From positions 62,001 to 126,000 of the IMG/VR virus record IMGVR_UViG_3300024358_000009: a DNA stretch of 64,000 bases. The stretch is one strand, 5' to 3'. Positions 8,560 through 54,500 of the stretch are shown here, one piece after another. The number at the start of each line of letters is the position of its first letter. Within the stretch, counting starts at the first letter, position 1. The position numbers were made by a program, and so were the translations under genes. The notes under the pieces were generated by a model, which saw only the letters and a program-made list of their open reading frames with translations, was not told the DNA's origin and ran no database searches.

Positions 8560-8560
8560 T

Positions 8561-34750: not shown

Positions 34751-35272
34751 CTAAGCACCAACTCTTGTCCAGTTAGCAACCCAGTATTTGCCTTGCACTA
34801 TATTACCTTGATCTATAGGTTCGCCCAAAAGTTCATATGTATATCTAATTAAGCCTTCAATATCTAACTGAAAGACCATCTTTCTTGTTTGCAAAACATC
34901 AGGAAGATCTTTCATGTAGCCTTTTGTTTGTATACTTCCGTCTGGCAATTGAATATGTGCTGGAAGTTTTTGAAAAAAATCTTTAGGAGAGTTAGCTACT
35001 AAAACTTTTATATCCTTAGTCATTGAATTAAAATGCAAACCGCTGCCATCACACATTGGACATGTAGATCCATTTTCAAACGGTATTGGGCCACCATTAG
35101 TCCATGTATTGGAAGATTTATTTCCTATTGGGTCGAATAGACAGTTTACGCAAGGAGAAGCAATAGGTGGATATATAAGTCTACAAGTTTTTCCAAGTTG
35201 ATCTATAAGATCATCTATGGCGAATTCCGCTATTTGTTTAATATCATCAGTTAATGAAAATATTTTTGCCAT
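34751..35272 (-). CDS. Putative head closure/stopper protein with two CxxC pairs
   Basis: 173 aa with CVNC and CPMC, and C-terminal YELLGEP...YWVANWTR. Call is from synteny. Confidence 0.45.
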   Translation of the reverse strand: MAKIFSLTDDIKQIAEFAIDDLIDQLGKTCRLIYPPIASPCVNCLFDPIGNKSSNTWTNGGPIPFENGSTCPMCDGSGLHFNSMTKDIKVLVANSPKDFFQKLPAHIQLPDGSIQTKGYMKDLPDVLQTRKMVFQLDIEGLIRYTYELLGEPIDQGNIVQGKYWVANWTRVGA

Positions 35273-36525
35273 TATTTTGTCCAGTATATTTTAATGGGTC
35301 TTGATCTAAATCTAGTGTCAGTAGAAGTTACACTTAAATTTGCTACAGCTATTTGATTTGGATTTATTCCATAATTACCAGATAAACTCAAAGATAAATC
35401 TTTAAACACTGCTATGCCATCGGTTGGAGTAACGGTAGTTGTTCCATTAAGAGAAACCGTTGGATTACCATAAATATTTTCAACTCCAGCAACACTGATT
35501 GATATTGTTCCTGTAATATTTTGATATGTCATATTGGCTTGACCATCAGCAGGAACATTAACTATAGATCCTGTAAAATTATCTCCATTGTCATAAACAT
35601 TGTCATATCCAGTTACAGCTTCTATAACTATTGGAATAGTAAATTGTTCGCCAGCTTTTTGTATTTGTGAGTTTTGTGGATAAATAACGGCATTAAGTCT
35701 GGCTGGTATACTTCTAGCTCTTGTATTTGTATAACCAAATATTCCTGTCGGAGAAGCTCTAAATGGGTGATGTGCAGCTGGAATACTATTCATTATGCTT
35801 AAATTATTAATGCTATTGTGAGAAATTAAAATATTGAATGTGGATGGATTTAAATAAGATTCCTGTGGTAATATTTTAAAATAACCAGATGATCCTAAAT
35901 TATCATACTGTAATGTTAAATAATAAACTTTATCAGCAGCTGGTATTCCCCATTTGTTTGCAGAAGTAACAGCACCAAAAGATGTGTATAATGTTGGTTT
36001 AAAAGTAGCACTATTATTTGATGAGTGCCAAGAACAGCTGAAACTGGTATTGCTTAATGAAATAACATTGTCTTCTTTATCAAAAAATTGAAAAAAGTAA
36101 GTTATAAATCCTTCGGTTGGATAATTAGCTGGCCCATTTATTTCTACTTCGTACTCTGAAGGAATCCTTCCGTTAATAGGTCTTTCATAAGGTAAACTAT
36201 TAATGGTTTTTGGTAAAACCTTAGTGACTAAATCTGTATAATTACTATGATAAAGTTTCATATAAGATGGATATATTACATTAGATAACTGGCAATTTGG
36301 GAGAATTGGAATCCACTTACTTAAATTATCACGCCAAATATAGATAATATTATTTAATGTGTTTTGCCACAACCCTCCTTGTTTATCGGCTAATGTTGGT
36401 GCTGTTGGTGCTCTAAATATTCTTTCTCTTTCAATTCTTTTCCACCCATTAAAATTACTAAAAATAAATAGATTGTTATCTACTTCATAAACTTCATTTT
36501 CTTGTGGATTAATTGGAAAAGGCAT
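35272..36525 (-). CDS. Fibre-associated protein (417 aa), MPFPINP paralogue
   Basis: True start is probably MPFPINP at 36525 (RBS gagg), not 36609. N-terminus is paralogous to the upstream 80-aa ORF, and the C-terminus is an Ig-like beta region. Confidence 0.6.
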   Translation of the reverse strand: MPFPINPQENEVYEVDNNLFIFSNFNGWKRIERERIFRAPTAPTLADKQGGLWQNTLNNIIYIWRDNLSKWIPILPNCQLSNVIYPSYMKLYHSNYTDLVTKVLPKTINSLPYERPINGRIPSEYEVEINGPANYPTEGFITYFFQFFDKEDNVISLSNTSFSCSWHSSNNSATFKPTLYTSFGAVTSANKWGIPAADKVYYLTLQYDNLGSSGYFKILPQESYLNPSTFNILISHNSINNLSIMNSIPAAHHPFRASPTGIFGYTNTRARSIPARLNAVIYPQNSQIQKAGEQFTIPIVIEAVTGYDNVYDNGDNFTGSIVNVPADGQANMTYQNITGTISISVAGVENIYGNPTVSLNGTTTVTPTDGIAVFKDLSLSLSGNYGINPNQIAVANLSVTSTDTRFRSRPIKIYWTK

Positions 36526-36532
36526 TTTAACC

Positions 36533-36775
36533 TCATGTACATTTAGTCGAAAAGTATGGTATCCAATTATTGTTTTCCCAAAAATAAATAACACCACCGT
36601 CTTCGTCAAACCAAATTGCTATTCTTGAAGAATCTATATTTTGAGTTGGTCGATCTGGTTGTGCAAAAAAATTGGTAGGTTCTTCTTGTACCCAGCCAAT
36701 ATCTTGTTTGTATCTAAAATATTTGTTTCCAATTACATGTATATCATCATTAACTGGATTTATAGGAAAAGGCAT
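36533..36775 (-). CDS. Small MPFPINP paralogue (80 aa)
   Basis: Shares MPFPINP...(F/Y)...GW and W.D....IYFW....WIP with the next gene. Confidence 0.6.
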   Translation of the reverse strand: MPFPINPVNDDIHVIGNKYFRYKQDIGWVQEEPTNFFAQPDRPTQNIDSSRIAIWFDEDGGVIYFWENNNWIPYFSTKCT

Positions 36776-36776
36776 A

Positions 36777-37586
36777 TTAGTTCCCCTTTAAATCGCTTAA
36801 TATAGTTCCTGGAGGTTCATAATTTGCAAAAACATAAAAATATCTAGGTCCAGTGTTTTGATAAGACAATTCATGATCAGCAAACCCAAAATTTTGAACT
36901 CTTGTTTCTGGTAATTGTGCAGTTTCTAAATAACTCCATTTCGGCCCTTTTTCCATTCCGTTAAAAATAGCTGCGTCAAAATTTATTGGGTTTCTTACTT
37001 CTAGGTTTCTTTTGTCAATTGAACCTGTATAACAATTATGTGCACCCAAAGGAATTCCCTCTGGTAGTTCAAACTTTAAATAGTTTACATTTGTTAAATC
37101 GGTCAAACTTTTCCATCTATCAAAAGGAAAACCATTAGTTGAAGCACTAATAAATTTTTCTAAACTTGGATCTCCTAATGTATAATAGTACTGTTTACTT
37201 TTTGGATCTTTTCCTGCGTTACATTCATATAAAAATGATATGTATAAAAAAGGTTTTTCTTCTAAATAATAAAATTTAAAATAAATACTTGTTTTAAATC
37301 CGACTTCCTTAACTAATTCCTCTGGACAACAACCAATAGGATGTCCTGATGAAAAATTTTGATCGTAAATCATAATATCGACATTTGATTTTCCATAATT
37401 TGAATTTTTTATATACTGTTTTGTCTGTGGAAACTCGTAGTAAAATTGATGATTAAAATCTCTTGGGTTAAAATTTAAATTTTTATTTTTTAAAAAAAGC
37501 CAAGATGGACTTTGTGATCTCCAATTGAATCTTGGATCTGTAAAGAAAAATCCAGCTGTTAAATTATAAACTTTGTTGTTTAACAT
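36777..37586 (-). CDS. Hypothetical protein
   Basis: 269-aa ORF coupled to both neighbours. No family recognised. Confidence 0.6.
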   Translation of the reverse strand: MLNNKVYNLTAGFFFTDPRFNWRSQSPSWLFLKNKNLNFNPRDFNHQFYYEFPQTKQYIKNSNYGKSNVDIMIYDQNFSSGHPIGCCPEELVKEVGFKTSIYFKFYYLEEKPFLYISFLYECNAGKDPKSKQYYYTLGDPSLEKFISASTNGFPFDRWKSLTDLTNVNYLKFELPEGIPLGAHNCYTGSIDKRNLEVRNPINFDAAIFNGMEKGPKWSYLETAQLPETRVQNFGFADHELSYQNTGPRYFYVFANYEPPGTILSDLKGN

Positions 37587-40500
37587 TATTTTCGTCCTGC
37601 TGCAACATAAGGTGGTTTATTTGGCTTGCCATTAAACTCTCCAGTTGCCCAATCTAAATAAGCTTGTTCTGCCGTAAGGTTTTTGCCTGGTATACTATAA
37701 AAACAAATATCTTTAGAGATGTTTTGCTCTCCGGTTACTTGATATTGTTTTTGCTCTCCTTTGACATTTACATTAACTGTATCTAATGAATTTCCTGGAA
37801 TAGATTGCAAGCATCCATCTTCATCTATGTATGTTTTGTATTTAATAGTCATTTGTGCACAAAAACCAACTTCTTTTGGTTGTTGTACAACTTCACCATT
37901 AACCAAAGCATTTTTAACATTTGATTTACAAAAATTACAAGGTTCAAGTTTGCCTCCAAAATTATCTATGTTTGTATCTGTGTAAGGAGGAGTTGCAAAT
38001 TTTTGTCCATTATAATCTCTTTGAACACAAGGAGGTTTTGGTTCATTACCACGCCTTAAATTATCTACAACTACAGCTGGATTGCCTGGTTGTGGTACTC
38101 CAGCTATACCTCCACCACCACCAAAACCACCACCACCTAAACCAAGACCTCCTAAACCACCTAATCCGCCTAAACCGCCTGGATAACCATATCCACCGCC
38201 AAAACCTCCTGGTCCTGGTCCTGGAGGCAAACAGTCTAAAAGACCTGGAGTTCCTCCATAAATAGCATGTTCACATATTTTTTTAATTCCACAAGCTGTA
38301 TTTATAAGTATAGATTTACAACATTTATTAACTATATTAGTTATAATTCCATAAACACCTCTTATATAAAAAGTATATACTTCTTCTCCTGGTGGACATG
38401 ATCCATTAACAGGATTAGTTCCGGTTGGTAATGGATTTGGTGGTTGTGGGCGTGTAGGACCAGTAACAGGATTTGTAGAATTAGTACCAATAACACCTGG
38501 GCCAACAGCATATGGTTCTGGTTTAACCAAAGGACTGTCTGGGTTAATAGCTAAAGCAGAAGAATTAAAATTATCATCTGGATCTTCAGCACCTTCTGGA
38601 TTTGCTAAATCTTGCGAAGGAACTATTTCTCCAGTAGGATTTCCATCTTCATCTACATAAGGTCTTCCAGTCGCAGGATCTATTTGTAAGTTATAAGTTA
38701 AATTATTAAAATTTGAAACAGTTGTACATTTTCCATAAGAAAGCATGAATGGATCAACATTTTTAATGTTTGCTGACCAATGAGACATAATGTCAGCTTG
38801 CGTAACTGGTGCTATATTAGATAAAGATGTTAATAATTCTCCCCATTGAGCAGCACTAATAACCATGCCCTGACCTTCTGCCATAGCTGAAGGAGAACCA
38901 TTAAATCCAATAAGATTTTCACCACAAGGACCATTCTTTTCTAGAATAGCTTGTTGTAATGAACCACTCATATTTGAACTACTGAATGGGCCTACAAGCG
39001 GAACATAATCGCCTTCGTTATATAATTCATTTGGCTTATTTATTGAAAAATATTTTTTAGGATCTGTTTCTTTTCCATGAAAGTAAGAAGAACATGCTTG
39101 TCCAACTAAACTAGCAGCACTATCAATAAACTTGCTTCCGTTATTTCTATTTAACCAAAGACCTTTTAACAAACACGGTCCAAAACCAAAGTTAACAGCT
39201 GAATTAGTTCCATTTAACATATTTCCTATTTCAAGCGTGTTATGATTACCTATAAGTGCTATAGTTCCATTTTTAAATCTATGTAAACCAACTTCTGATT
39301 CTGGATCTGGATAATAAACCTCACATCTTGGATTACAAATTGCACCAGCTACGAAATTTGGTAACCAACCAGTATCTCCAGATATATTTACAGAACCTCT
39401 ATAGTATGGGTCTGGTCCATAAAGAAAACCACGCTCATATGGATCGTTATAAAAACCAATAGTATTAAAAGTTACAACTAAGAAATTAGAATAACCATCT
39501 TCTTCATTACCTCTTCTTGTAAAAGCAGGACTTAATATAAAATAAGCTGTTTGTGCAGAAAATGTGTAGCCTTCTGGGGTTGTATATTTACTTGTTTTAC
39601 AACCAGTTTTTATGTGTTCATCAATTTTTATATTTAATGAATCAGTGATTGGATAAGAAGGTTTTCTACAATTTGTAGCATCTAAATGAGGAACTGGAAA
39701 AACATTGCTATTAGCTAAAACATTTGTTAACGCAAAATAATTTCTTTGTGCCTCTAATAATCCCATTGCAGACGCAGATATTGATGGTAACACAACGCCA
39801 AAATCTGGATTATTTTGTGCTGGAAAATCACCGCAATTAAAAAGATAAGATGTATCACTTCTGTCGGGACTTCTAATATCGTGAATATTTGTTCCATGAA
39901 CTGAATGTTTTAACTGAGTAAATCTTAACCAAGATCTTCCAATTCTACCCTTTTCTTTTTGTGAGTAGTTCCAATAACAAACGGTATTCGACATAACTGG
40001 ACCACCAGAATTATTTACTGGATCGCCAATGTCATTTTCAATAACTTTTCTTACATAACCACCAACAGTTATATAGATTTTACCATTTCTAAATGTAATT
40101 CCATCGGGCATTTTAAGAGCAGTACCAGAAGGACCAACGGTTGTAGTTGTTCCTCCCGGCCCTGTAGTTGTTGTAGTAGCTGTAGTCGTGGTTGTAGTTA
40201 CAACAGGAGGTAATGGAGGACGATTAATACTTATTTTTGTTGTTGTTGTTTGAGTATTTGGTGTTGTTGTAGTAGTTGTTATTAAACCTGTGCAATCTGG
40301 TTCTAATGTAATTCTTGTGGTATTATTATATTCAATATTTGTTCCGCCTATATGCCTTATTTCTTTTAACATACCTCTGATATTATATATATTTCCTATA
40401 GAGTATGCATCTAATGTTTGGTATATAGAAAGAGGGTTTTTAGGATTATAACTTGCAGCAACATAGAAAATCGGATTTGAATTTTGTCTTGTCAAAGTTG

Positions 40501-43500
40501 ATTCATGAACATAAAATTCTGGTTGAATATAACCATATTTTAAAAGCGATCTTCCATAAGGTAATTGTTTAAAAGAACATTCCCACCTAGATATAAAAGC
40601 TTTTTGTTGTTCTTCATTTTGATAAGGAACAATTTCTTTTATATTTTTATCATAAAATACTATACCAACTAAACAACCATGACTTGCATGCCAAGGATCT
40701 CTATTCAATACGACAGAATTAAGATATTGTTTTTGACTTGGATTTCTAATTATTATAGGAACAAATCTTTCATCTTTAAATATAGAGCCTGTTCCTGAAA
40801 GTTGATCGATTATTTGTTTTTGTGAATCATTTAATTGTGGATATGATTTTTTCCAAAAATAAAATGTTGTTCCTCCAGATTGATATTCTTCCTGTGTATC
40901 AAACCAAAGTTGTAATTGCCAAGTTATATAATGAAGACCTATATTTATATTTGATCTAGAAGAAAAACCTCTTAAAATAATACTTGTGTTTATAAATCTT
41001 TTTGTGTTTAAGTTGAAAAGACACTTTCTTGGAATGTTACAACTTTTTAAAAAGTCATAATATGGACCAGTTTCTTCAGGTGGATATTCATTGGTTAATG
41101 GATCTGTTAAAATAGAAATTGGTTTATAAGCAAAATAATATAAAGTTGGATCATTATTAGTAATAAAATCATTAGATGTTAATTTTTCAAATCTTCCATC
41201 TGGCAAATCTGTTACATAAATTCCAGTATAAGGACTAGTACTATATTGTTTATAATAATTTAAAAATAAATTTAATTCAGGACAACAATTATTTGCTGGT
41301 TTAGATAAATTATTTAAATTAAAACAATATTGAAAAGTTGATGTCAATTCTGCTTTAGCTAAATCGCATGGTGTAGGAGGTGCACTTGTAGTAGTGGTTG
41401 TAGTAGTGGTAGTGGTAGTTGTACAGATAGCTAAAGAAGCTGCCTGTAAAGCAGTTTCACATTCTTCCTGAGATGTGTATATTCCACTTCCATCAACTTC
41501 ACAAACACAATCAAAACAATCTAAAGCTTCGTTATAAACAGATTTCCAACTTGGACATGGAGTTGTACTAGTGGTAGTTGTTGTGGTTGTTGTAGTAGTC
41601 GTAGTCGGAGGAGTAATACTACTACATTCAACATGGTGAACATGAGCATTGCCATTAAAGAAACTGGTTATTACAAATTTATCGGTATCGGTGTTTTCAT
41701 TTTTTGGAAAGAATTCTATGTTATGAAATAAATAGTCTTCACCGAGATCATATTCATGCCAATTAAAACTATCAAATGTAAAATATATATATCTTTTATC
41801 AGTTAATGCTATCGCACCTATTCCATTTGAAACTACATCTATAAATTTTACTGGGGCATTAGCATTAATATTATTTATTATTACTGATTGCCACTGAGTA
41901 AAATTATTTGGATATGAAACTTTAAGATTACCATTATTATCTATTGCTAAATAATGCAAAGAATCAAAATCTATTCTTTTGTAAGTGGATTTGAGTGTTA
42001 TGCCTTGGTTTTGAGCTATTATAAATGTATTTGAATTTCCTTTTTTAACATAAACATCATCCGATGAACTTGTTGATAATATAAAAATATCACTATTATT
42101 TGTAATTGGTTCTAAATAAGCATCTCCATTAAATGTACCTTCAAAAATTTTACCACTTCCAAAATAACACTTATATACATTGTTGTTTTTAGTTAAAAAA
42201 TAGTTTTTTGTAACAGAAACTACATATTCTTCAGAAGTTTCAAAAATTAATTGTTCTGGAGGTAAAATACTTGGAGCAATAATCATAGAAGAATCTGTGT
42301 TTAAAACAGCTTCTATATTAAAATTAATATCAATAGGCGTATTAAAACTAGAATTATTTGGTGTGTTTATTAAGTTATAACCTAAATTATCAAAAAGATC
42401 ATATCTAATTTCTGTATCAAATAAATTAATGTCATTTGTTTTATAAAATGTCTCTAAATTTCCAAGTATATAAATAATGGCTGTTTTATTTGTATTATTA
42501 CCAATAGAAGATAAATAACCTTTTTTAATATATGGACTTGGAGAAGTAGCTTTTTCAACTTTTACTGTTTTCCAAGTTCCAAAACACTCTGGAGGTGCTT
42601 GAGTAGTTGTTGTAGTCGTTGTTGTGGTTGTTGTCGTTGTTGTCGTAGTAGTTGTGGTGGTATTTAAACTAGTAGTTGTTGTAGTTGTATTAAAATTATT
42701 TTGTAATACATGCACATCGCAAGAACATGATTCTGTTAAAAATTCAAAATTTGGAATTGACTGAAATTTATTGAAAGTTGTAACAAATTTAGGTTCTATT
42801 ATTGAAGTGTTATTTTTATTAGTTGGACTATTAAAACTTCTATACATAAAAGGAAATTTTTGATCATCAGTATTTCCAAAATAAACCGGAAGAGTTTGAT
42901 AAAGCAAAACAGTTTCTATGCCGGTTTTTAATGGAACAGAAAAATTATTTGAAACAAGAGATATTTTAAAGTTATCTAATCCTAGATCACCAAGTTCTGT
43001 TAAATTAGGTTCAAAAAGTTTTATATATGGTATTTTTATAATATTTAAACATTCAACTGGAGAACCAAAAAAAAGCACATCATTTAACTGATCGGTTAAG
43101 CTTTTTCCGGCTTCGCCAGGTTCATAAAATTCATAACATTGTTTTCGCAAAACAATATACAAACTGTGCCAATCAGCATCAGATGCAACATATTCCAAAT
43201 TACATTTATTATAATCGGTATCCAAAAGTATTTTATAATCTGTAGCGTTGTCATCGCCTTGCTCAAGAATAAATTTAGAAATACTTGGTGCAGTTCCTGA
43301 TGGAAGACCGTTATTTTGTAATAAATATTTAAATGTATAAAATTCAAATGGTGTAGCTACAAAGAAATTTGAAACAAAGGTTGTGTTTCCATTTATAATT
43401 TCGGTAGTACGATTTTCATGAATAAAAATAGAACCTTTAATGTCATATTTATCTTCAAATATTTTTACAAAGTTATAAGTTATAAAACCAGAAGCATTTT

Positions 43501-45529
43501 GTGTTAAAGTTCTGCATTTTGTTTGTGCTTCTTCTATTTCTTCAGTATTGGATTTAAAACCAACAAATGTTCCTGTATTAACTAGTCCTAATGACGCAGA
43601 AGGATTTGATGTAGAAAAATAACCTGTTAAAAATTCATTGTTATTAAATAATTTACCAGATAATACACATTGACCATCCCAAGCACCTTCTACTTGTTCT
43701 TGTGACCATCCAAAAATATCTGTCTGAACACTCTTATTTGCAAAAAAGTTTGGTATAAAAACTGATTTAATTGAGTTGTATAAATTTGGATCGTATTGTG
43801 GAGCGGTTGCGATTATATGCGTTCCATCGGCATATGTATTAGAAGATGTTTTTCTACCACCTGATAAAACATAAAATCTTGAATTAGAAGATACTATATT
43901 ACTGTAATAATCATTTATTTTTGAAGTATTTAAAGTAAATTTTGAATTAAAAGAACTAGGGGCAGCACTATCAGAATATAAATTAGATAAAAATCTATTT
44001 TGTATATATAACTGTCTTTCGTTCTGTGGAAAGATAGTATTTTTTAGATCATATTTATCTAATCGAACAAAGCCTATTGATGGAGGTCCAAAATAATTAT
44101 TTTCTATAATACTAGAAAATGTTAAAATTATACCGTTTCCAAACTTGCCTACAATAATATCAAAATCCCAATTGAAATTTCTATTAGAATTGTCTTTATG
44201 AGGAATGTAATAACTAGATGTTTTAAAGTTATGTCTAGTGTCATAAGTTGAAGCATTGAGATGTAAATTAAATCTATAGTCATTTAATTTTAATACTGCT
44301 GAATTACTTGTATAGTTTAAATCTTCAGATGTTATAAATACCGCAAATTCATTATTTTGTGGTGGATTATTAGGTCTTACAGTTGTTGTTGTAGTGGTTG
44401 TAGTTGTAGTGGTCGTGGTAGTTGTGGTTGTAGCAGTCGTAGTCGTTGGTGCTGTCTTTACATTAATTGGTATATTATGAATAATGTCTTGCAATGAATT
44501 GAATATAGAACCGTTTTGCCTAAGTTTTATAGAAGTTTTTACTGTGTCTAGTAAATAAGATCTTAAAATATATCCTAATGTTAATTTAAATGATGGTATT
44601 GAAGACACGCCATTAGTTACATCTCTAGAACCAAACGAAAATGTTTCAACAAAATCATTTTGGCCATTATCTATTACTTGTATAATTATTCCAGTAACTG
44701 CATTAGAAGCAGACATATTAAAATTATTAGCAAGTACTCCATTTTCATCTAAAAAAGATATATAAATATTATTTGTATTAACAAATGTTTCATATGCTTC
44801 TAAACTTAATTGATCATGTTGTGTGCTTGAATTTGCGATTGTAGCTGGATTAGTCATACTAGCTACAATTTGAGAAGCGACAGAACCTGGTCTTAAAACA
44901 GTAACTGGTGACCAATCTGGATCACTATTAGATATTTGTGCTGCATTATCTAAAGTCAAAGTAAATGTTAAATATACTATAATATTAGCATTATTCGCAA
45001 AAATAGATGGATCTGTTCCTATCCATTCTAATCTTAAAGAATTAGCATCTATAGTATAAGTAGAATTTGTGGATATAGATTTAGAAAATGTTCCACCAGA
45101 AGAATTTTTAATTAAAAAATTATTATTAGAAGAAGTAACTGTTAATGTGCCTACTGCTTTTATTGGTGATAAAGGTAATCCAGAATTTGTAAAAGTTAAT
45201 ACTATATTTTCTGAAATAAGAGATTTTCCAGAAGAATCTAAACTAATAGATGTGGGAATTCCAGCTGTTACACGAAGAGTATCTGGGTATACAGCAGTAG
45301 GACTTAATGTCGTTGTGGTAGTTGTTGTAGTAGTCGGAGCGGAATTAATAGATTTAATAGGAATCCACTGTTGTGAGTTTGGATTCCAAAAAAATGTAGC
45401 ATTGCTTGCTGTATTATACCAAAAAGCAGGTCTTTTTCTTTCAACTATTTTTGGTTCATTGGGCTGTCTATATACTAAAGAATCTCTAGAAGGATTAGAA
45501 ATTCCTGGCAATTCGTTAGGATTAGGCAT
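37586..45529 (-). CDS. Giant mucin-like adhesin/fibre protein (2647 aa) with poly-Thr linkers
   Basis: Six Thr-rich tracts separate globular, Cys-rich and beta-propeller-like segments. Gly-rich stretch near the C-terminus. Lies within the virion operon. Confidence 0.7.
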   Translation of the reverse strand: MPNPNELPGISNPSRDSLVYRQPNEPKIVERKRPAFWYNTASNATFFWNPNSQQWIPIKSINSAPTTTTTTTTTLSPTAVYPDTLRVTAGIPTSISLDSSGKSLISENIVLTFTNSGLPLSPIKAVGTLTVTSSNNNFLIKNSSGGTFSKSISTNSTYTIDANSLRLEWIGTDPSIFANNANIIVYLTFTLTLDNAAQISNSDPDWSPVTVLRPGSVASQIVASMTNPATIANSSTQHDQLSLEAYETFVNTNNIYISFLDENGVLANNFNMSASNAVTGIIIQVIDNGQNDFVETFSFGSRDVTNGVSSIPSFKLTLGYILRSYLLDTVKTSIKLRQNGSIFNSLQDIIHNIPINVKTAPTTTTATTTTTTTTTTTTTTTTTVRPNNPPQNNEFAVFITSEDLNYTSNSAVLKLNDYRFNLHLNASTYDTRHNFKTSSYYIPHKDNSNRNFNWDFDIIVGKFGNGIILTFSSIIENNYFGPPSIGFVRLDKYDLKNTIFPQNERQLYIQNRFLSNLYSDSAAPSSFNSKFTLNTSKINDYYSNIVSSNSRFYVLSGGRKTSSNTYADGTHIIATAPQYDPNLYNSIKSVFIPNFFANKSVQTDIFGWSQEQVEGAWDGQCVLSGKLFNNNEFLTGYFSTSNPSASLGLVNTGTFVGFKSNTEEIEEAQTKCRTLTQNASGFITYNFVKIFEDKYDIKGSIFIHENRTTEIINGNTTFVSNFFVATPFEFYTFKYLLQNNGLPSGTAPSISKFILEQGDDNATDYKILLDTDYNKCNLEYVASDADWHSLYIVLRKQCYEFYEPGEAGKSLTDQLNDVLFFGSPVECLNIIKIPYIKLFEPNLTELGDLGLDNFKISLVSNNFSVPLKTGIETVLLYQTLPVYFGNTDDQKFPFMYRSFNSPTNKNNTSIIEPKFVTTFNKFQSIPNFEFLTESCSCDVHVLQNNFNTTTTTTSLNTTTTTTTTTTTTTTTTTTTTQAPPECFGTWKTVKVEKATSPSPYIKKGYLSSIGNNTNKTAIIYILGNLETFYKTNDINLFDTEIRYDLFDNLGYNLINTPNNSSFNTPIDINFNIEAVLNTDSSMIIAPSILPPEQLIFETSEEYVVSVTKNYFLTKNNNVYKCYFGSGKIFEGTFNGDAYLEPITNNSDIFILSTSSSDDVYVKKGNSNTFIIAQNQGITLKSTYKRIDFDSLHYLAIDNNGNLKVSYPNNFTQWQSVIINNINANAPVKFIDVVSNGIGAIALTDKRYIYFTFDSFNWHEYDLGEDYLFHNIEFFPKNENTDTDKFVITSFFNGNAHVHHVECSSITPPTTTTTTTTTTTTSTTPCPSWKSVYNEALDCFDCVCEVDGSGIYTSQEECETALQAASLAICTTTTTTTTTTTTSAPPTPCDLAKAELTSTFQYCFNLNNLSKPANNCCPELNLFLNYYKQYSTSPYTGIYVTDLPDGRFEKLTSNDFITNNDPTLYYFAYKPISILTDPLTNEYPPEETGPYYDFLKSCNIPRKCLFNLNTKRFINTSIILRGFSSRSNINIGLHYITWQLQLWFDTQEEYQSGGTTFYFWKKSYPQLNDSQKQIIDQLSGTGSIFKDERFVPIIIRNPSQKQYLNSVVLNRDPWHASHGCLVGIVFYDKNIKEIVPYQNEEQQKAFISRWECSFKQLPYGRSLLKYGYIQPEFYVHESTLTRQNSNPIFYVAASYNPKNPLSIYQTLDAYSIGNIYNIRGMLKEIRHIGGTNIEYNNTTRITLEPDCTGLITTTTTTPNTQTTTTKISINRPPLPPVVTTTTTTATTTTTGPGGTTTTVGPSGTALKMPDGITFRNGKIYITVGGYVRKVIENDIGDPVNNSGGPVMSNTVCYWNYSQKEKGRIGRSWLRFTQLKHSVHGTNIHDIRSPDRSDTSYLFNCGDFPAQNNPDFGVVLPSISASAMGLLEAQRNYFALTNVLANSNVFPVPHLDATNCRKPSYPITDSLNIKIDEHIKTGCKTSKYTTPEGYTFSAQTAYFILSPAFTRRGNEEDGYSNFLVVTFNTIGFYNDPYERGFLYGPDPYYRGSVNISGDTGWLPNFVAGAICNPRCEVYYPDPESEVGLHRFKNGTIALIGNHNTLEIGNMLNGTNSAVNFGFGPCLLKGLWLNRNNGSKFIDSAASLVGQACSSYFHGKETDPKKYFSINKPNELYNEGDYVPLVGPFSSSNMSGSLQQAILEKNGPCGENLIGFNGSPSAMAEGQGMVISAAQWGELLTSLSNIAPVTQADIMSHWSANIKNVDPFMLSYGKCTTVSNFNNLTYNLQIDPATGRPYVDEDGNPTGEIVPSQDLANPEGAEDPDDNFNSSALAINPDSPLVKPEPYAVGPGVIGTNSTNPVTGPTRPQPPNPLPTGTNPVNGSCPPGEEVYTFYIRGVYGIITNIVNKCCKSILINTACGIKKICEHAIYGGTPGLLDCLPPGPGPGGFGGGYGYPGGLGGLGGLGGLGLGGGGFGGGGGIAGVPQPGNPAVVVDNLRRGNEPKPPCVQRDYNGQKFATPPYTDTNIDNFGGKLEPCNFCKSNVKNALVNGEVVQQPKEVGFCAQMTIKYKTYIDEDGCLQSIPGNSLDTVNVNVKGEQKQYQVTGEQNISKDICFYSIPGKNLTAEQAYLDWATGEFNGKPNKPPYVAAGRK

Positions 45530-48467
45530 ATGCGTTTCCTGAGAATGATACCCAATTAGAACCGTTATTATCAGTTATCCAAAAATATAATACAGAATTA
45601 GTAGTGTCATACCAAACAGCAAAAGAATTGCTTGGTGGATTTGACGGCCTACTAGGCTGTTGATAAAAGTTTACCACAGCTAGTCCTGGAGTTCCAGCAG
45701 ATCCTTGATAACCTTGAAATCCTTGTGGGCCAGTTGGGCCAGTAGGACCATTTTGGCCAGCTTGACCGGTTGGACCAGTTGGACCAACAGGACCAGATGA
45801 ACCATTAGATCCTGGAGTTCCTGGAGTTCCATTAGAACCATTAGCACCAAAAATATCACGCAAAGTAAAGGTTCTATTTTTTGAAGATTGTGTAGATTCA
45901 AGTATCAAAGTTGTAGAAGATTCATTTATAGGAATATCCCAAACAACTATGTTTTTAGTTCCTGCTAATGGGTCATTATTTTGAGTTGTAGCTACAGTAG
46001 AATTTGATCCTGTCGCTGTTCTAATAGCTAATAATTCTGGAGAAGATGTGAAATCAAAGAAGTATCTTTGACCCCTTATAATTGTGATCGGTTCTGTATT
46101 ACCAAGACCTTGTATTTCAATTAATGAAGAATTATTTGTTACTGTATATAAAGTTCCGCCTCTATCTCCTTGATAACCTTGAAAACCTTGAAAACCTCTT
46201 GGGCCAGCAGAGCCAATTAAGCCTTGTCTTCCTTGAGAACCTTGTGACCCAGCACCACCTTGAAAACCTTGAAAACCTTGTGGACCAGTAGAACCATTAG
46301 ATCCAGCATTACCTTGAAAACCTTGTGATCCTGTAGTTCCAACATTTCCTTGAAAACCTTGCGGACCAGTAGAACCAGAACTTCCAGATAAACCAGTAGA
46401 ACCTTGAAAACCTTGTGGGCCTGTAGAACCAGATGTTCCAGTAGACCCCTGAAATCCTTGAGGACCAGTAGATCCATTTGTACCATTTGTTCCAGCAGAT
46501 CCTTGGAAACCTTGACTTCCTTGGTTACCTTGAAAACCTTGATCTCCCTGAAAACCTCTAGATCCAGACGAGCCAACAAGTCCTTGTCTACCCTGAGATC
46601 CTTGCGGACCAGTTAAGCCAGTTAATCCTTGAAAACCCTGAAATCCTTGGGGTCCATTAGAACCACCGGTAGCACCAGCTTGTGCAACAGTAGCCCAATA
46701 TAAAGGATTTAAATCTGGCTGTTTTGGAGAAGAACTAGTACTTGCAAGTATAGCTATATAACTAGTGCCACCATAATAAACTACATCGTTAAGAGAGTAA
46801 TTAGTAGAAGATGACCAATCACCCTTCCAAGATATACCAGTATTACCTTGGATACCTTGAAAACCTTGAGATCCTTGAGGACCAGCAGCACCTTGAGAAC
46901 CTTGGGAACCATTATTTCCAGCAGCACCTTGAGAACCTTGAGATCCTTGGGAACCATTATTTCCAGAAGCACCTTGAGAACCTTGAGATCCTTGAGGGCC
47001 AGAAGATCCAGCAGCACCTTGACTGCCTTGACTGCCTTGTGAACCATTACTACCGGCAGAACCTTGTGCACCTTGAGAACCAGTAACTCCTACTGGACCT
47101 TGAGATCCTTGAGAACCTTGTGATCCAGAAGAACCAGTAGATCCTTGAGATCCTTGTGGACCAGAAGAACCTTGAAAACCTTGAGAACCTTGAGTTCCGG
47201 CAGATCCTTGATTTCCTTGAGATCCAGTAGATCCTTGATCTCCTTGAGAGCCTTGAGAACCTTGATTACCAGTAGACCCTTGATTTCCTTGAGATCCTTG
47301 TGGTCCAGTAGAACCAGTAAAACCTTGATTGCCTTGACTACCAGAAGAACCTTGTAAACCTTGAGATCCAGTAGAACCCTGTGGTCCAATGACACCAACT
47401 ACACCCTGAGAACCCTGAGAACCTTGAAAACCTTGAGTACCAGTAGATCCTTGAACACCTTGGACTCCGTTACCACCCTGCAAACCTTGCAAACCCTGAG
47501 AGCCTTGTGATCCTTGAGATCCTTGTAAACCTTGAACACCTTGATTGCCTTGAGGACCAGTATAATCGGTAACGGAAATAGATCTTATAATTGCAGGATT
47601 AGTTATTGATTGAACAACTATACCGCTAGAAGGAGCATCTAAAGGTATTTCATAAGTAATGATTTGACCTGTACTTCCAGAAGATTCATTATTATTAGAA
47701 CTAGTTCCAGCAACATTAGTAGTTAAACCATCTCCATTTCTAATAGCTACAAAGTTAGATGTTAATGCGGAAAAATCGAAAAAGAATTTTTGTCCACGAC
47801 AAACAGTTATTGGATCTGAATTGTTAGAAATGCCTTCAACGGCAAATTGATTACTTACTATAGAAAAAATAAATTTGGTTCCACCACTTATACCTTCAGA
47901 ACCCTGATATCCTTGTAGACCTTGAGATCCAGCCGAGCCTTGACCTCCTTGACTACCTTGACGACCTTGACTTCCTTGAGAACCTTGTGATCCTTGTGAA
48001 CCCTGCGTTCCTTGAGATCCTTGCGATCCCTGTGTTCCTTGTGATCCCTGAGATCCCTGACTACCTTGAACACCTTGCGAACCGGTATAACCTCTGTCTC
48101 CCTGAGAACCTTGTGATCCTTGAGAACCCTGAGATCCTTGCGAACCTTGTGAACCCTGAGAACCTTGATTACCTTGCGAACCTTGAGATCCAGAAGTTCC
48201 AGTTGATCCTTGGGAACCTTGTGATCCTTGAGATCCCTGAAAACCCTGACGACCTTGTGCTCCTTGTGCTCCTTGTGCACCAGTAGCACCGTCTCCAAAA
48301 GCTGCCCAATAAGTAGAAGCCGTTTCTGGATTTTGATTAGTAGATGACTGAATGGCTATATAAGTAGATGAATTATATTCAACTATATCGTTTGCAGTAT
48401 ATGATGCAGAAGAAGACCAAGTGCCCTTATAAAGAACACCTATAGAACCAGTATTAATTAACGGCAT
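45522..48467 (-). CDS. Collagen-like fibre protein (981 aa, GSQ-rich)
   Basis: Long (G-X-Q)n tracts, two W..W....Y...D.V.Y CBM-like modules, and two RGQ.(F/Y)FFDF domains. Confidence 0.85.
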   Translation of the reverse strand: MPLINTGSIGVLYKGTWSSSASYTANDIVEYNSSTYIAIQSSTNQNPETASTYWAAFGDGATGAQGAQGAQGRQGFQGSQGSQGSQGSTGTSGSQGSQGNQGSQGSQGSQGSQGSQGSQGSQGDRGYTGSQGVQGSQGSQGSQGTQGSQGSQGTQGSQGSQGSQGSQGRQGSQGGQGSAGSQGLQGYQGSEGISGGTKFIFSIVSNQFAVEGISNNSDPITVCRGQKFFFDFSALTSNFVAIRNGDGLTTNVAGTSSNNNESSGSTGQIITYEIPLDAPSSGIVVQSITNPAIIRSISVTDYTGPQGNQGVQGLQGSQGSQGSQGLQGLQGGNGVQGVQGSTGTQGFQGSQGSQGVVGVIGPQGSTGSQGLQGSSGSQGNQGFTGSTGPQGSQGNQGSTGNQGSQGSQGDQGSTGSQGNQGSAGTQGSQGFQGSSGPQGSQGSTGSSGSQGSQGSQGPVGVTGSQGAQGSAGSNGSQGSQGSQGAAGSSGPQGSQGSQGASGNNGSQGSQGSQGAAGNNGSQGSQGAAGPQGSQGFQGIQGNTGISWKGDWSSSTNYSLNDVVYYGGTSYIAILASTSSSPKQPDLNPLYWATVAQAGATGGSNGPQGFQGFQGLTGLTGPQGSQGRQGLVGSSGSRGFQGDQGFQGNQGSQGFQGSAGTNGTNGSTGPQGFQGSTGTSGSTGPQGFQGSTGLSGSSGSTGPQGFQGNVGTTGSQGFQGNAGSNGSTGPQGFQGFQGGAGSQGSQGRQGLIGSAGPRGFQGFQGYQGDRGGTLYTVTNNSSLIEIQGLGNTEPITIIRGQRYFFDFTSSPELLAIRTATGSNSTVATTQNNDPLAGTKNIVVWDIPINESSTTLILESTQSSKNRTFTLRDIFGANGSNGTPGTPGSNGSSGPVGPTGPTGQAGQNGPTGPTGPQGFQGYQGSAGTPGLAVVNFYQQPSRPSNPPSNSFAVWYDTTNSVLYFWITDNNGSNWVSFSGNAYA

Positions 48468-51552: not shown

Positions 51553-54500
51553 CTAGCACCACAAAACAATTCCACAATTCACTCCATACCAATTTGCTGT
51601 TGATGATGCGTTTTGAATAGGGGTTACATAATGGTAACCAATACTGCTGGTATATCCATGTGTTGAAATAGTTCTTACAACATATCCTGAGATTTGCGAA
51701 TCAGTATAAGCTGTTCCAAAAAATGATGTTGTAGAATCCAATCCGAAACCAGCTTGAGCAGTTGATCCGGCAGCACCGGTTCCAACAGCCAATACCCCAG
51801 TTATTAAAACTGGAGACTCATTAAGTCCATTAATAAAATTAAGTCTGGTAACGCTTGCTCCACCATTCCATTCTCTACTTGCACCACTCCATGCAAAATT
51901 AAGTGAAAAAGCGGTAACAAAACCATGCCTTAAAATTCTGTTGTGATTGTTCCATAGGTAACGATTGGCAGCAGAATCTTCAGTTGTAGTTGCAGCAGTT
52001 GCCCTAAATGTTCCAAGATACCTTCTGCTTAAATCTGTTGTTTTTACATAAACACCATTTTGAAAAGATATTGCAGAACTTCTTGAAGAAGTAGTACCCC
52101 ATGCTACTGGAGGGTCTAATGCTAATGTTCCAGAACTTAAATAACCAAATACATCATACAATGTTCCAGAAGATAATCCTGAAAGTGCTAATGTTTTTTC
52201 TGTGAAAGAACAATTTACCCAAGAAGAAGATGATGTGTTATATAAACTTATTTTATCACCATTATAAGGTGTGTAGTAGACATTAGATGCTGATGTGACA
52301 TCAGAAGTTGTTACTGGTGTACCAGATGTTAATGTCAATCTTCCACCTGAAAATAATCCTTGTACTTCCCAACTAGGTGCTGCTGTTCCGTTAGAACGCA
52401 AGACCTGACCAGATGTTCCAGCAGCAAGAAATGAAGTCGCTCCTGAACCTGTGTTGTAGGGAATCTGTCCTGCACCACCGCCAAGCAAATTGGTAATTCC
52501 GTTTGTCCAGCTTAAGTTTCCGCTACCATCTGTTTTTAAAACATAGTTGTTGGTTCCAGCAGTAGTAGGCAATGTTAATGTGTAATTGGTGGCTATAGTT
52601 GCTGGAGATTGCATGGCAACATAATTGCTGCTATCAGCGTCTGCAAATCTTATGTCTGTCTGTGCATTTAGGTAAAGATTTCCGGTGGCATCAAAATAAC
52701 TGTATACAGTAGTTCCTAGATAATCTCTGAACTCTAGTAATGGGTATGTCTGACCACTTGCACCAAAAATTCCAAAAACACCAAATGCAGCATTATTGCT
52801 GTAAAGAGCTAATTGATCATAAGCTGATGAGCCATATGAAAAGGAGGAAGTAGCTGTAAAACCAGCAGAACCATCATTGTATTGAATATCTCCAGTAGAG
52901 CCAGCAGCACTTGCACCAGCAGCACTAGTCCAAGATAATGTTCCTGCACCATTAGTTGATAAAACTTGTCCAGATGTTCCATCGGCTGTTGGATAAGATA
53001 ATCCAGCAGCAACAAGAGTACCAATAGTAGCTTGTCCAGCTATTCCAGCACCACCAGCAACAATTAATGATCCAGTACCAGTAGTTGTACTAGCAGTAGT
53101 ATCATTGATAGTAGTAGCACCAGTTGGACCGATAGAAAACAGAGTTGCTGTTGTACTATCTTTTAATATAACTAAATTTCCAGTTTGTGATGCAACAGCA
53201 TTTATCGTTAAAGTATTGTCTGTTGTTACAGTTTCAGTAATCGTTAATCCACTTAAAGTTCCAACACTAGTTATAGAACTAGTATTCATCCAACTTGGTG
53301 CTGAAGTTCCATTGCTTTTTAAAATTTGACCACTTGTGCCAGCAGCAAGAAATGATGTAGCACCAGAGCCAGTATTATATGGAAGTTGTCCTGCACCACC
53401 GCCAGCAATATTTGTTGCAGATGTAGCATTACCGCTTAATGAAGCAGTTATAGTTCCAGCCGAAAAATTTCCCGAAGCATCTCTTTGTACTACATATGAA
53501 GCAGTATTTGTTGAACTGGAATTAATTCCTATTGTTCCAGTTGATGTAATAGTTCCACCAGTAATTGGCGAATTTGTGGCAATCGAAGTTACTGTTCCAT
53601 TACCTGTACCAGCACCGATAGAAGTTCTAAATGTAGATGCAGACTCTGCTGTAACAGTATTGTCTGCATTAACTTTTAAAAATGTTACTGCTGAAGGATT
53701 TGTTAGCGTAAATAAATTACTTCCTACTGTTGTACCACCAAGACTAGTTCTTCCTGTAGCAGCTACTAAATTTGTTGAGCCACCATCCCATTGACGGCGT
53801 TCAGAATATGCGGAATCCCAGTTGGTCTGACTTGCCGAAGTTGGTAGTGCATAGCCAGTATCCATCGCAATAGCGATTGTTCCACTAGATGTAATCGGAG
53901 AATTTGTAACTTTCATTCCTGTTGGAACAGATACGCCAACAGATGTTACAGTTCCACCTGAAGATGGAGACGAGTTAGTAATTGTAAACGAAGGGTAAGT
54001 ACCAGTAACCGATATGCCAGTTCCAGCAGTCAATGTTACAGTCTGATCTGGTGAACTATTGGTAATAGTGAAATTTGGATAAGTACCGGAAGTAGAAATT
54101 CCTGTTCCAGCAGTCAAAACAACAGTTTGATCTGGTGATGAATTAGTTATCACACCAGTCGTATTATTGTATGAAATACCAGTTCCAGCAGAAAGAGCGG
54201 ACCTAGCCCTAGTATCTGTGTAATAAAGATTTGAGCCTTCACTTATACTAGATGTTGATCCAGCTACATTTTCCCAAACTTTAGAAGAACTATTGTATTG
54301 AATAATATCATTATCAGCTAAAGTTCCACTATTAATGCTGACATTATGTAATTCTTCTAACTCATAACCATTTTGTATATTTACTAATATAGAACCTTGA
54401 TTAACACTTACATTTACTACAGTTCCAATAAATACAGCATGATCTGGAGCAGTTGGTTTAGTAGTAGTTAAACCACCAGCAGTAGTTGGCGATAACCACA

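What the first reader, a model, noticed from the sequence alone, without database searches (positions are those of the whole stretch)
37586..45529. 2647-aa mucin-like virion protein: six poly-Thr tracts maintained at the protein level
Thr runs lie at about 45308-45334, 44381-44446, 42601-42690, 41563-41607, 41387-41424 and 40135-40282, some about 20 residues long. They use mixed ACA/ACT/ACC/ACG codons, so they are not slippage microsatellites and appear selected as Thr. They link globular blocks, including a possible beta-propeller (Asp-box-like TFDSFNW, about 41700-42560) and Cys-rich units (CPSW..DCFDCVC..SQEECETA..C). This beads-on-a-string layout resembles eukaryotic mucins and adhesins.
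Basis: partly seen in the sequence, partly recalled or inferred. Interest (0 to 1): 0.72.

Follow-up and report, generated by a model that had tools for sequence, protein, structure and literature searches.

The report
Giant modular phage fibre, poly-Thr linkers
A 2,647-residue protein of an uncultured river phage is a chain of unrelated globular modules joined by runs of threonine; relatives shuffle, split and fuse the same modules, which fits a fast-evolving host-recognition fibre, while sugar coating like a mucin remains untested.

Summary
Window 37586-45529 (-) is one open 2,647-aa frame with six Thr tracts at the stated places. The tracts use more mixed codons than the rest of the gene, and their lengths are identical in the assemblies of four runs.

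The gene lies in the structural operon of a tailed phage of about 149 kb from river metagenomes. It sits between collagen-like fibre genes and the tape-measure gene. No Pfam, PHROG, NCBIfam, PDB or phage-database match was found.

Two related phage lineages settle the architecture:
- A 64-aa N-terminal segment is conserved (52-53% identity to the target).
- Modules A, B and the 45-aa Cys-rich unit recur in a different order.
- Module E is a separate 534-aa gene in the relatives.
- The slot holds two giant genes in the relatives and one here.
- Junctions carry poly-Thr, (TP)n, SPTG or Pro-rich linkers of varying length.
- Flanking structural genes are 62-91% identical, against 26-53% for this gene.

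Best reading: a virion-anchored, hypervariable, multi-module adhesin or receptor-binding fibre with flexible Thr linkers.

The mucin-like reading (O-glycosylated tracts) is untested. Glycosyltransferase and sulfotransferase-like genes inside the structural operon give indirect support. An Asp-box is absent, and the beta-propeller call for block C rests on weak leads. Both structure predictions failed.

The parts
37586..45529 (-). Whole gene (g138, P0001), 2,647 aa, one open frame
   Evidence: Identical in IMG/VR, JGI and Logan assemblies.
45338..45529 (-). N-terminal conserved segment, aa 1-64, proposed virion anchor. It carries the motif P..P...[AG].W[YQ][ND]T.N..[YF].W....W[IV].
   Evidence: 52-53% identical to the giant-1 proteins of the two relatives, which are 66% identical to each other. 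The motif is also found in g136 at aa 63-102 and at the C-terminus of collagen-like g139.
45308..45334 (-). Thr linker 1 (T9, aa 66-74)
44447..45307 (-). Module A, aa 75-361
   Evidence: Homologous (32-34% identity) to P0006 aa 671-863 and P0004 aa 954-1161, that is, at a different position in the relatives.
44381..44446 (-). Thr linker 2 (T4-A-T17, aa 362-383)
42689..44380 (-). Module B, aa 384-947
   Evidence: 26-29% identical to P0006 aa 1074-1589 and to aa 106-638 of the SECOND giant gene of G002 (P0008). No other homologue found.
42602..42688 (-). Thr linker 3 (T6-SLN-T20, aa 948-976)
41606..42601 (-). Module C, aa 977-1308, an orphan all-beta domain, possibly beta-propeller-like
   Evidence: No homologue anywhere. 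Weak propeller leads only.
41570..41605 (-). Thr linker 4 (T12, aa 1309-1320)
   Evidence: A T18 tract sits at the same junction in relative G001.
41423..41569 (-). Cys-rich mini-domain, aa 1321-1369, 6 Cys
   Evidence: Conserved in P0006 aa 998-1040 (36% identity, phmmer 4e-7). A look-alike with no significant score (phmmer E 0.43) sits in P0004 from about aa 788.
41387..41422 (-). Thr linker 5 (T12, aa 1370-1381)
40280..41386 (-). Module D, aa 1382-1750, orphan
   Evidence: No homologue in relatives or in the phage's own proteome.
40139..40279 (-). Composite Thr/Pro/Gly-rich linker 6, aa 1751-1797
38510..40138 (-). Module E, aa 1798-2340, with 8 conserved Cys
   Evidence: Identity is 39-42% to stand-alone 534-535-aa genes in relatives, where the gene sits between the g145-like and g143-like genes. 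It was the only true hit among 1.84 billion representative proteins.
38075..38509 (-). Pro-rich stretch, Cys-rich stretch and a 45-aa Gly-rich stretch (58% Gly), aa 2341-2485
   Evidence: Weak positional resemblance to the C-terminal end of giant-2 in both relatives.
37589..38074 (-). C-terminal domain, aa 2486-2647
   Evidence: Only a weak alignment to the C-termini of the relatives' giant-2 proteins.
45522..48467 (-). Upstream neighbour g139, a 981-aa collagen-like fibre whose C-terminus carries the shared W-motif
51553..58305 (-). g147, a 2,250-aa collagen-like fibre that also uses T8 and T19 linkers
35272..37586 (-). Downstream neighbours g137 (269 aa) and g136 (445 aa), part of the same hypervariable island. 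g136 carries the W-motif.
   Evidence: Identity to the relatives is 44% for g137 and 32-34% for g136, against 62-91% for the flanking genes. Motif.
60363..61858 (-). g149 (sulfotransferase-like) and g150 (GT2-like), at the head of the fibre gene block. Candidate modifying enzymes.
   Evidence: Pfam PF13469 at 2.7e-7 (above its cut-off) and PF00535 at 3e-3 (below its cut-off). Both are conserved in the same place in G001.
7747..8574 (-). g123, a family-2 glycosyltransferase at the distal end of the tail gene block
   Evidence: PF00535 at 8e-8, above the cut-off.

Best explanation
The gene encodes a giant, hypervariable, multi-module adhesin or receptor-binding fibre of an uncultured tailed phage from river water, with a genome of about 149 kb.

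Proposed mechanism:
- The conserved 64-residue N-terminal segment docks the protein on the particle or on the neighbouring collagen-like fibre (inferred).
- The rest projects outward as seven or eight independently folding, mostly beta-rich and Cys-containing modules.
- The modules are separated by short hydrophilic Thr linkers of 9-47 residues. Fully extended, each would span about 3-16 nm, so each module can search the host surface on its own (inferred).
- Modules are gained, lost, reordered, fused and split between related phages. This is how the lineage changes binding specificity (shown at the sequence level; the functional consequence is inferred).
- The Thr runs are kept as protein-level linkers and are written in mixed codons. 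That coding style is what selection against replication slippage would produce (shown as a statistic; the cause is inferred).
- The linkers may additionally be O-glycosylated in the cytoplasm by the phage's own glycosyltransferases (speculative).
For: - Position: the gene sits in one co-directional structural operon. The order is TerL, portal, major head protein, collagen-like fibres, this gene, nine smaller genes, then a 3,976-aa tape-measure-like gene.
- Hypervariable island: flanking structural genes are 62-91% identical to the two relatives. This gene is 26-53% identical and g136/g137 are 32-44%.
- Conserved N-terminus with shuffled modules, and a fission/fusion event: there are two giant genes in the relatives and one here, and module E is a separate gene in the relatives.
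- Low-complexity linkers occur at every module junction in all three lineages.
- The N-terminal motif is shared with two other proteins of the block.
- Codon mixing in the tracts.
- Tract lengths are identical in the assemblies of four runs.
- The gene is present at 96-100% of sampled words in river metatranscriptome libraries.
Against: - There is no direct evidence that the protein is in the virion.
- No module matches any known fibre, receptor-binding or carbohydrate-binding family.
- Both structure predictions failed, with pLDDT 29 and 42.
- The gene lies upstream of the tape-measure gene, whereas siphovirus receptor-binding genes usually lie downstream of it. It could therefore be a head, neck or collar appendage and not a tail fibre.
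- Oligomeric state is unknown. Classic fibres are trimers, and a poly-Thr chain of beads may be monomeric.
- Only three lineages are known, so the comparative sample is small.
Confidence: 0.6

Rival explanations
1. True mucin-like glycoprotein. The Thr tracts exist mainly to be densely O-glycosylated, and perhaps sulfated, by phage enzymes. This would give a hydrated, protease-resistant, sticky or shielding coat on the particle.
For: - The genome carries at least three GT2-type and four or more GT1-type glycosyltransferase hits above Pfam cut-offs.
- It also carries an NTP-transferase, a nucleotide-sugar epimerase/dehydratase and a sulfotransferase-like gene.
- Two of these genes (g149, g150) sit at the head of the fibre gene block and are conserved there in a relative.
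- Virion glycosylation by phage enzymes has a precedent in mycobacteriophages: Freeman et al. 2023, as cited in PMC12582341. I could not read the primary paper.
Against: - Thr runs make up only 4% of the protein and act as short junction linkers.
- Homologous junctions in relatives use Pro-rich or SPTG linkers or none, so a dense Thr array is not conserved.
- No glycosyltransferase has been linked to this substrate. The enzymes could just as well modify host surface glycans, DNA or the collagen-like fibres.
- The N-terminus shows no signal peptide when read directly.
Confidence: 0.2
2. A multi-enzyme scaffold of the cellulosome or CAZyme type, virion-borne or released at lysis. The modules would degrade or bind host capsule, EPS or particulate polysaccharide. 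Ser/Thr-rich linkers are typical of such proteins.
For: - In a survey of prokaryotic low-complexity regions, Ser/Thr-rich regions were enriched in proteins that bind or process polysaccharides, whereas phage low-complexity regions were enriched in Ala, Gly and Pro (PMC6821194).
- Weak language-model leads point to NHL, SMP-30 and BNR-type propellers for modules E and C.
- Module E exists as a free-standing gene in the relatives.
Against: - No catalytic or carbohydrate-binding family was recognised by Pfam, NCBIfam or PDB profiles.
- The Atlas scores of 0.80-0.90 lie within the range that shuffled proteins reach.
Confidence: 0.12
3. Assembly or annotation artefact: two or three genes wrongly joined, or a chimeric contig.
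For: - The 206-kb record itself looks chimeric at its ends.
- The relatives have two giant genes plus a separate module E gene.
Against: - The same uninterrupted 7,944-nt frame, with 0-1 mismatch, occurs in at least four IMG/VR records and in a 149-kb JGI contig. The index lists it in 67 blocks of the collection.
- Logan contigs from four runs span it without indels.
- The chimeric-looking part of the record lies outside this region.
Confidence: 0.02

Closest known systems
Phage receptor-binding fibres and side fibres with a conserved N-terminal anchor and exchangeable distal modules (for example T-even long tail fibres, lambda Stf, T5 pb1; from general knowledge)
   Same: It is encoded in the structural operon. 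The N-terminus is conserved and the distal part is variable and mosaic. It is far more diverged than the flanking genes. It lies next to collagen-like fibre genes.
   Different: It has no detectable homology to any fibre family. It sits upstream of the tape-measure gene. Its modules are joined by homopolymeric Thr linkers and not by a continuous trimeric shaft. Trimerisation has not been shown.
Eukaryotic mucins and bacterial serine-rich-repeat adhesins
   Same: It has hydroxy-amino-acid tracts flanked by Cys-containing globular units. Dedicated glycosyltransferase genes lie nearby, and serine-rich-repeat adhesins are glycosylated in the cytoplasm (general knowledge).
   Different: The tracts are short (9-47 aa, 4% of the protein) and not hundreds to thousands of residues. 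There is no signal peptide or accessory secretion system. Glycosylation has not been shown.
Multi-modular glycoside hydrolases and cellulosomal scaffoldins with Pro/Thr/Ser linkers
   Same: It shows the same beads-on-a-string logic, the same kind of linker chemistry and the same ease of domain shuffling (PMC6821194).
   Different: No catalytic, CBM, cohesin or dockerin domain is recognisable. The protein is phage-encoded and has no secretion signal.
Glycosylated collagen-like fibrils of giant viruses, and glycosylated mycobacteriophage virions
   Same: The virus encodes its own glycosyltransferases together with collagen-like structural proteins.
   Different: Those systems modify capsid, tube or fibril proteins. 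No poly-Thr multi-module protein is known there, to my knowledge.

Membership tests
Mucin (PTS-domain glycoprotein) | Long Pro/Thr/Ser tandem-repeat domain that dominates the protein | tested here: not met
   105 residues lie in Thr runs, which is 4.0% of the protein. The six linkers are 10-47 aa long.
Mucin (PTS-domain glycoprotein) | Dense O-glycosylation of the tracts | not testable with these tools
   Only indirect evidence is available: glycosyltransferase and sulfotransferase-like genes in the genome.
Mucin (PTS-domain glycoprotein) | Secretory signal peptide | tested here: not met
   The N-terminus, read directly, is polar and Pro/Asn-rich with no hydrophobic stretch. No predictor was run.
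Sialidase/BNR beta-propeller | Repeated Asp-box SxDxGxTW | tested here: not met
   There are zero matches. The relaxed 7-residue pattern occurs once, which is chance level (p = 0.49). There is no Pfam BNR hit.
Beta-propeller fold (any superfamily), block C | Confident model or significant structural match to a propeller | tested here: inconclusive
   The AF2 model has pLDDT 42 and pTM 0.37, with about 20 short strands. The top Foldseek hits are almost all propellers, but at E >= 3e-3 and TM 0.2-0.29. Atlas scores are 0.83-0.90 to DUF6242_C, BNR and WD40-like clusters.
Phage receptor-binding / tail-fibre protein | Encoded within the virion structural gene block | tested here: met
   It lies between the major head protein and collagen-like fibre genes on one side and the tape-measure gene on the other.
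Phage receptor-binding / tail-fibre protein | Much higher divergence and mosaicism than neighbouring structural genes, with a conserved attachment end | tested here: met
   26-53% identity against 62-91% for the flanking genes. The N-terminal 64 aa are conserved and the modules are reordered.
Phage receptor-binding / tail-fibre protein | Homology or fold match to a known fibre or receptor-binding domain | tested here: not met
   There are no PHROG, Pfam, NCBIfam, PDB or phage tblastn hits.
Phage receptor-binding / tail-fibre protein | Presence in the virion and a role in adsorption | not testable with these tools
   The phage is uncultured and its host is unknown.
Collagen-like phage fibre | Long G-X-Y repeat arrays | tested here: not met
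   This protein has none apart from four GGL triplets in its 45-aa Gly-rich stretch. The neighbours g139, g147 and g148 do have them.
CAZyme/cellulosome-type modular protein | Recognisable catalytic or carbohydrate-binding module | tested here: not met
   Pfam finds no family even at E <= 1.

The most novel reading that the evidence does not exclude
The phage builds a genuine viral mucin analogue. Its own cytoplasmic glycosyltransferases, and possibly the sulfotransferase-like enzyme encoded at the head of the fibre gene block, would decorate the poly-Thr linkers of the two giant fibre proteins (g138 and g147). The virion would then carry flexible, protease-resistant, glycan-coated tentacles made of fold families not yet described.
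Probability: 0.2. Interest if true: 0.8.

Novelty: new variant of a known kind. Interest (0 to 1): 0.5.

Why it matters
If the reading is right, this phage lineage solves host recognition with a monomer-like chain of exchangeable modules on homopolymeric Thr tethers. That design is known from cellulosomes and adhesins but is not a described phage fibre architecture.

The three lineages capture fusion, fission and reordering of modules in progress. This gives a clean natural example of how linkers make domain shuffling possible.

Every module is an orphan. Only one true hit was found for module E among 1.84 billion representative proteins, so the protein holds several probably new folds.

Glycosyltransferase and sulfotransferase-like genes located inside a structural operon make virion glycosylation testable in a phage that is not an actinobacteriophage.

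Tried and rejected
Searches that found nothing:
- Pfam, PHROGs and NCBIfam on the whole protein and on the relatives' giant proteins gave no hits, apart from an FN3 domain in one relative.
- tblastn against 50,697 phage records found nothing. The C-terminus of the collagen-like neighbour also found nothing.
- Word-indexed homology searches on the full length, on module B and on module C found nothing.
- An exhaustive phmmer search with module E found one true relative and one low-complexity false hit.
- PDB profile searches with module E and with the N-terminal motif gave nothing significant.
- Pairwise hhalign comparisons of orphan modules C and D with each other and with the propeller-looking modules of the relatives gave nothing significant.
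- A metagenome-contig scan with the N-terminal profile returned only the same lineages.

Predictions that failed or were too weak:
- AF2 on module E with a 4-sequence alignment gave pLDDT 28.9, which is unusable.
- AF2 on module C from a single sequence gave pLDDT 42.3. I used it only as a weak lead.
- Atlas feature searches gave scores near 0.80 for module E (in the noise), a weak lead for module C, and nothing for module B.

Other dead ends:
- Host inference from the nucleotide-sugar epimerase was uninformative, with 41-50% identity to many phyla.
- Literature searches for poly-Thr linkers in phages found no precedent.

Rejected ideas:
- Slippage microsatellite: the codons are mixed and the tract lengths are stable.
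- Asp-box sialidase: the motif is absent.
- Mis-assembly: the frame is identical in many independent assemblies.

I did not run complex prediction, because no specific binding pair is claimed.

Full report
**1. The observation**

Window 37586-45529 on the minus strand is a single ATG-initiated frame of 2,647 codons. It is by far the longest frame there on either strand.

- aa 66-74
- aa 362-383
- aa 948-976
- aa 1309-1320
- aa 1370-1381
- a composite Thr-rich stretch at aa 1751-1797

With Thr at 10.9%, runs of nine or more are not expected by chance (about 6e-6 expected).

The codon claim is correct and stronger than stated. Inside the tracts the rare codons ACC and ACG are 2.4-fold enriched relative to the other Thr codons of the same gene (Fisher p = 0.01). 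Neighbouring codons are identical less often than expected, 25 of 93 against 38.4 +/- 5.1 (p about 0.005). Third-position GC over the modules is only 0.05-0.19. Tandem Repeats Finder sees only imperfect repeats at the tracts.

Contigs from four public runs, two labelled DNA and two metatranscriptomic, cover the gene with no substitution or indel, so tract lengths are the same in all four. Assembled contigs drop rare variants, so minor length variants cannot be excluded.

In the whole genome only this protein and the 2,250-aa collagen-like fibre g147 contain any homopolymer of six or more residues.

**2. Genomic setting**

The window is bases 62001-126000 of a 206,326-bp IMG/VR virus record. 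GC content is 31.7%.

The first 59 kb and the last 57 kb of the record are collinear and 74-85% identical. Another sample contains the gene on a 149,443-bp contig. The real genome is therefore probably about 149 kb, and the record is a run-on of two related strains. The gene itself lies outside the duplicated part.

Runs that hold the gene are riverine metagenomes and metatranscriptomes.

On the minus strand the order is:
- large terminase, portal and a major head protein (weak hit)
- a GT2-like gene and a sulfotransferase-like gene
- collagen-like fibres of 686 and 2,250 aa
- seven small genes
- a collagen-like fibre of 981 aa
- the target
- nine smaller genes (123-445 aa)
- a 3,976-aa tape-measure-like gene
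- further large tail genes

The terminase is only 21-25% identical to those of Bacillus Staley-like and C. difficile phiCD211-like siphoviruses. This is a deep-branching tailed phage with an unknown host.

**3. Homology**

The protein has no Pfam, PHROG or NCBIfam family, no tblastn hit in 50,697 phage records and no PDB sequence relative. Word-indexed searches found nothing.

An exhaustive phmmer search with residues 1798-2440 against 1.84 billion representative proteins found a single real relative, a 534-aa protein at 41% identity.

Profile-guided scans of IMG/VR then recovered two related phage lineages, G001 and G002. A metagenome scan added nothing new.

**4. What the relatives show**

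The structural block is syntenic. Most of its genes are 62-91% identical to the target phage, for example g132 at 91%, g129 at 91% and g143 at 90%. The target is only 26-53% identical where it can be aligned at all, and its downstream neighbours g137 and g136 are 44% and 32-34% identical. The target therefore sits in a hypervariable island inside a conserved operon.

Within the island the following holds.

(a) The first 64 residues are conserved in all three lineages (52-53% identity to the target, 66% between the two relatives).

(b) Module A directly follows the anchor here but lies at about residue 670 or 950 in the relatives.

(c) Module B follows A here. It lies at about residue 1074 of giant-1 in G001 and at about residue 106 of a second giant gene in G002.

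(d) The 45-residue Cys-rich unit recurs in G001, again immediately after a poly-Thr run (T18 there, T12 here), with a look-alike in G002 that does not reach significance.

(e) Module E starts directly after the last linker. In both relatives and in an unrelated Logan contig it is a free-standing 534-535-aa gene located between the g145-like and g143-like genes.

(f) The relatives have two consecutive giant genes: 2,060 + 1,536 aa in G001 and 1,573 + 3,275 aa in G002. Here there is one. The Cys-rich and Gly-rich C-terminal end of the target weakly resembles the end of their second gene.

(g) Modules C and D have no relative anywhere.

**5. The linkers compared**

Every module junction in every lineage carries a low-complexity hydrophilic spacer, but not the same one:

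| Junction | This phage | G001 | G002 |
|---|---|---|---|
| After the anchor | T9 | degenerate T/P/S | T8 |
| Before module A | T9 | Pro-rich | T10 + T4 |
| Before module B | T22 | short P/T stretch | T7 |

Other linkers in the relatives are (TP)7, SPTG repeats and GPGGP arrays.

Codon mixing also varies between lineages. Adjacent identical codons number 2 of 17 in G001 and 19 of 30 in G002 giant-1.

So what is conserved is a flexible Thr/Pro-type tether at each junction, not a defined Thr array. The tracts do vary among relatives, but they are not unconstrained: they stay at junctions, stay hydrophilic, and in this phage are encoded in a mixed-codon way.

**6. Structure**

AF2 on module E with the four available sequences failed (pLDDT 28.9).

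AF2 on module C from a single sequence gave pLDDT 42 and pTM 0.37, with about twenty short strands. Foldseek then listed almost only beta-propellers (WD40, YWTD, YCF48, sortilin, NHL), but at E >= 3e-3 and TM 0.2-0.29. The language-model search pointed to DUF6242_C, BNR and WD40-like clusters at 0.83-0.90.

There is no Asp-box.

**7. Glycan genes**

The genome encodes several glycosyltransferases that score above their Pfam cut-offs:
- GT2 in g123 at the end of the tail block, and elsewhere in the genome.
- GT1-type genes at four or more places.
- A Glyco_trans_1_2 gene and an NTP-transferase gene on the plus strand at the start of the window.
- A nucleotide-sugar epimerase/dehydratase next to the terminase.

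Directly upstream of the fibre genes lie a sulfotransferase-like gene (PF13469, 2.7e-7) and a weak GT2-like gene. Both are conserved at that place in G001.

This makes modification of virion fibres plausible, and phage virion glycosylation has a precedent in mycobacteriophages (cited in PMC12582341). Nothing links these enzymes to the Thr tracts specifically.

In a published survey, phage low-complexity regions were enriched in Ala, Gly and Pro, and Ser/Thr-rich regions were associated with polysaccharide-binding or -processing proteins (PMC6821194). Poly-Thr linkers in a phage structural gene are therefore unusual.

**8. Interpretation**

The best-supported reading is a virion-anchored, rapidly evolving, multi-module adhesin or receptor-binding appendage, with the Thr runs acting as flexible tethers (confidence about 0.6).

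Shown:
- the gene and its tracts
- codon mixing in the tracts
- modularity, shuffling, fusion and fission
- the hypervariable island
- the glycan genes nearby

Inferred:
- incorporation into the virion
- anchoring through the N-terminal segment
- a binding function
- selection against slippage

Speculative: O-glycosylation of the tracts.

Where the protein sits on the particle (head, neck or tail) cannot be decided. The gene lies upstream of the tape-measure gene, which is atypical for tail-tip receptor-binding proteins.

**9. Novelty and score**

Modular, mosaic phage fibres and Ser/Thr/Pro linkers are both known kinds of thing. Their combination in an all-orphan 2,647-aa phage protein, with a documented fusion/fission series and glycan-modifying genes in the same operon, is a new variant.

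Interest is moderate (0.5). It would rise sharply if the tracts prove to be glycosylated.

Noticed in passing
whole record G000 (window = G000 62001-126000); G000 283-58947 versus 149670-206319: The first ~59 kb and last ~57 kb of the 206-kb record are collinear and 74-85% identical. A 149,443-bp contig with the same gene exists in another sample. The record is probably a run-on or chimera of two related strains, so its classification as a complete 206-kb genome looks wrong.
   Followed up: partly
window 17663-29593 (-): This is a 3,976-aa ORF whose N-terminal 430 residues match tape-measure PHROGs. If most of it acts as a ruler, the tail would be exceptionally long. The rest of the protein is unannotated.
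   Followed up: no
window 60363-61858 (-), 7747-8574 (-), 1362-3036 (+): Sulfotransferase-like, GT2-like, GT2, NTP-transferase and Glyco_trans_1_2 genes lie inside or next to the structural operon. More GT1 hits lie just upstream of the window. Their substrate is unknown.
   Followed up: partly
window 51553-58305 (-): The 2,250-aa fibre g147 combines N-terminal globular units joined by T8 and T19 linkers, long GxQ-type collagen-like arrays and a Ser/Thr/Gly-rich C-terminal part. It is the only other protein in the genome with poly-Thr.
   Followed up: partly
window 35272-36609 (-) aa 63-102; 45522-48467 (-) aa 934-974; 45338-45529 (-): A short Trp-rich motif (P..P...W[YQ][ND]T.N..[YF].W....W[IV]) is shared by the N-terminus of the giant protein, by g136 and by the C-terminus of collagen-like g139 and its G001 homologue. 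It has no PDB or Pfam match. It may be a common docking or assembly element.
   Followed up: partly
L022:16180-20205 (+) and L029:10146-19973 (-): The second giant genes of the relatives carry long GPGGP-type Gly/Pro arrays, SPTG linkers, repeated ~45-aa 'GGxGY...NG.V..I.I.N.G.GY' units and one FN3 domain. None of these is present in the target.
   Followed up: no
window 5084-5854 (+): An HNH/homing-endonuclease-like ORF lies among the glycan genes.
   Followed up: no
window 41384-41423 and 44399-44431, reads laid: Other contigs of 0.4-6.3 kb from the same river samples match only the Thr-coding stretches, with 3-4 mismatches. Other genes in the community therefore carry similar mixed-codon poly-Thr tracts, probably the related phages.
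   Followed up: no
window 40000-46000: GC skew turns positive and GC content drops to 27-32% over the part of the gene that encodes modules A-D, unlike the rest of the minus-strand operon. This may reflect amino-acid composition or foreign origin of these modules.
   Followed up: no
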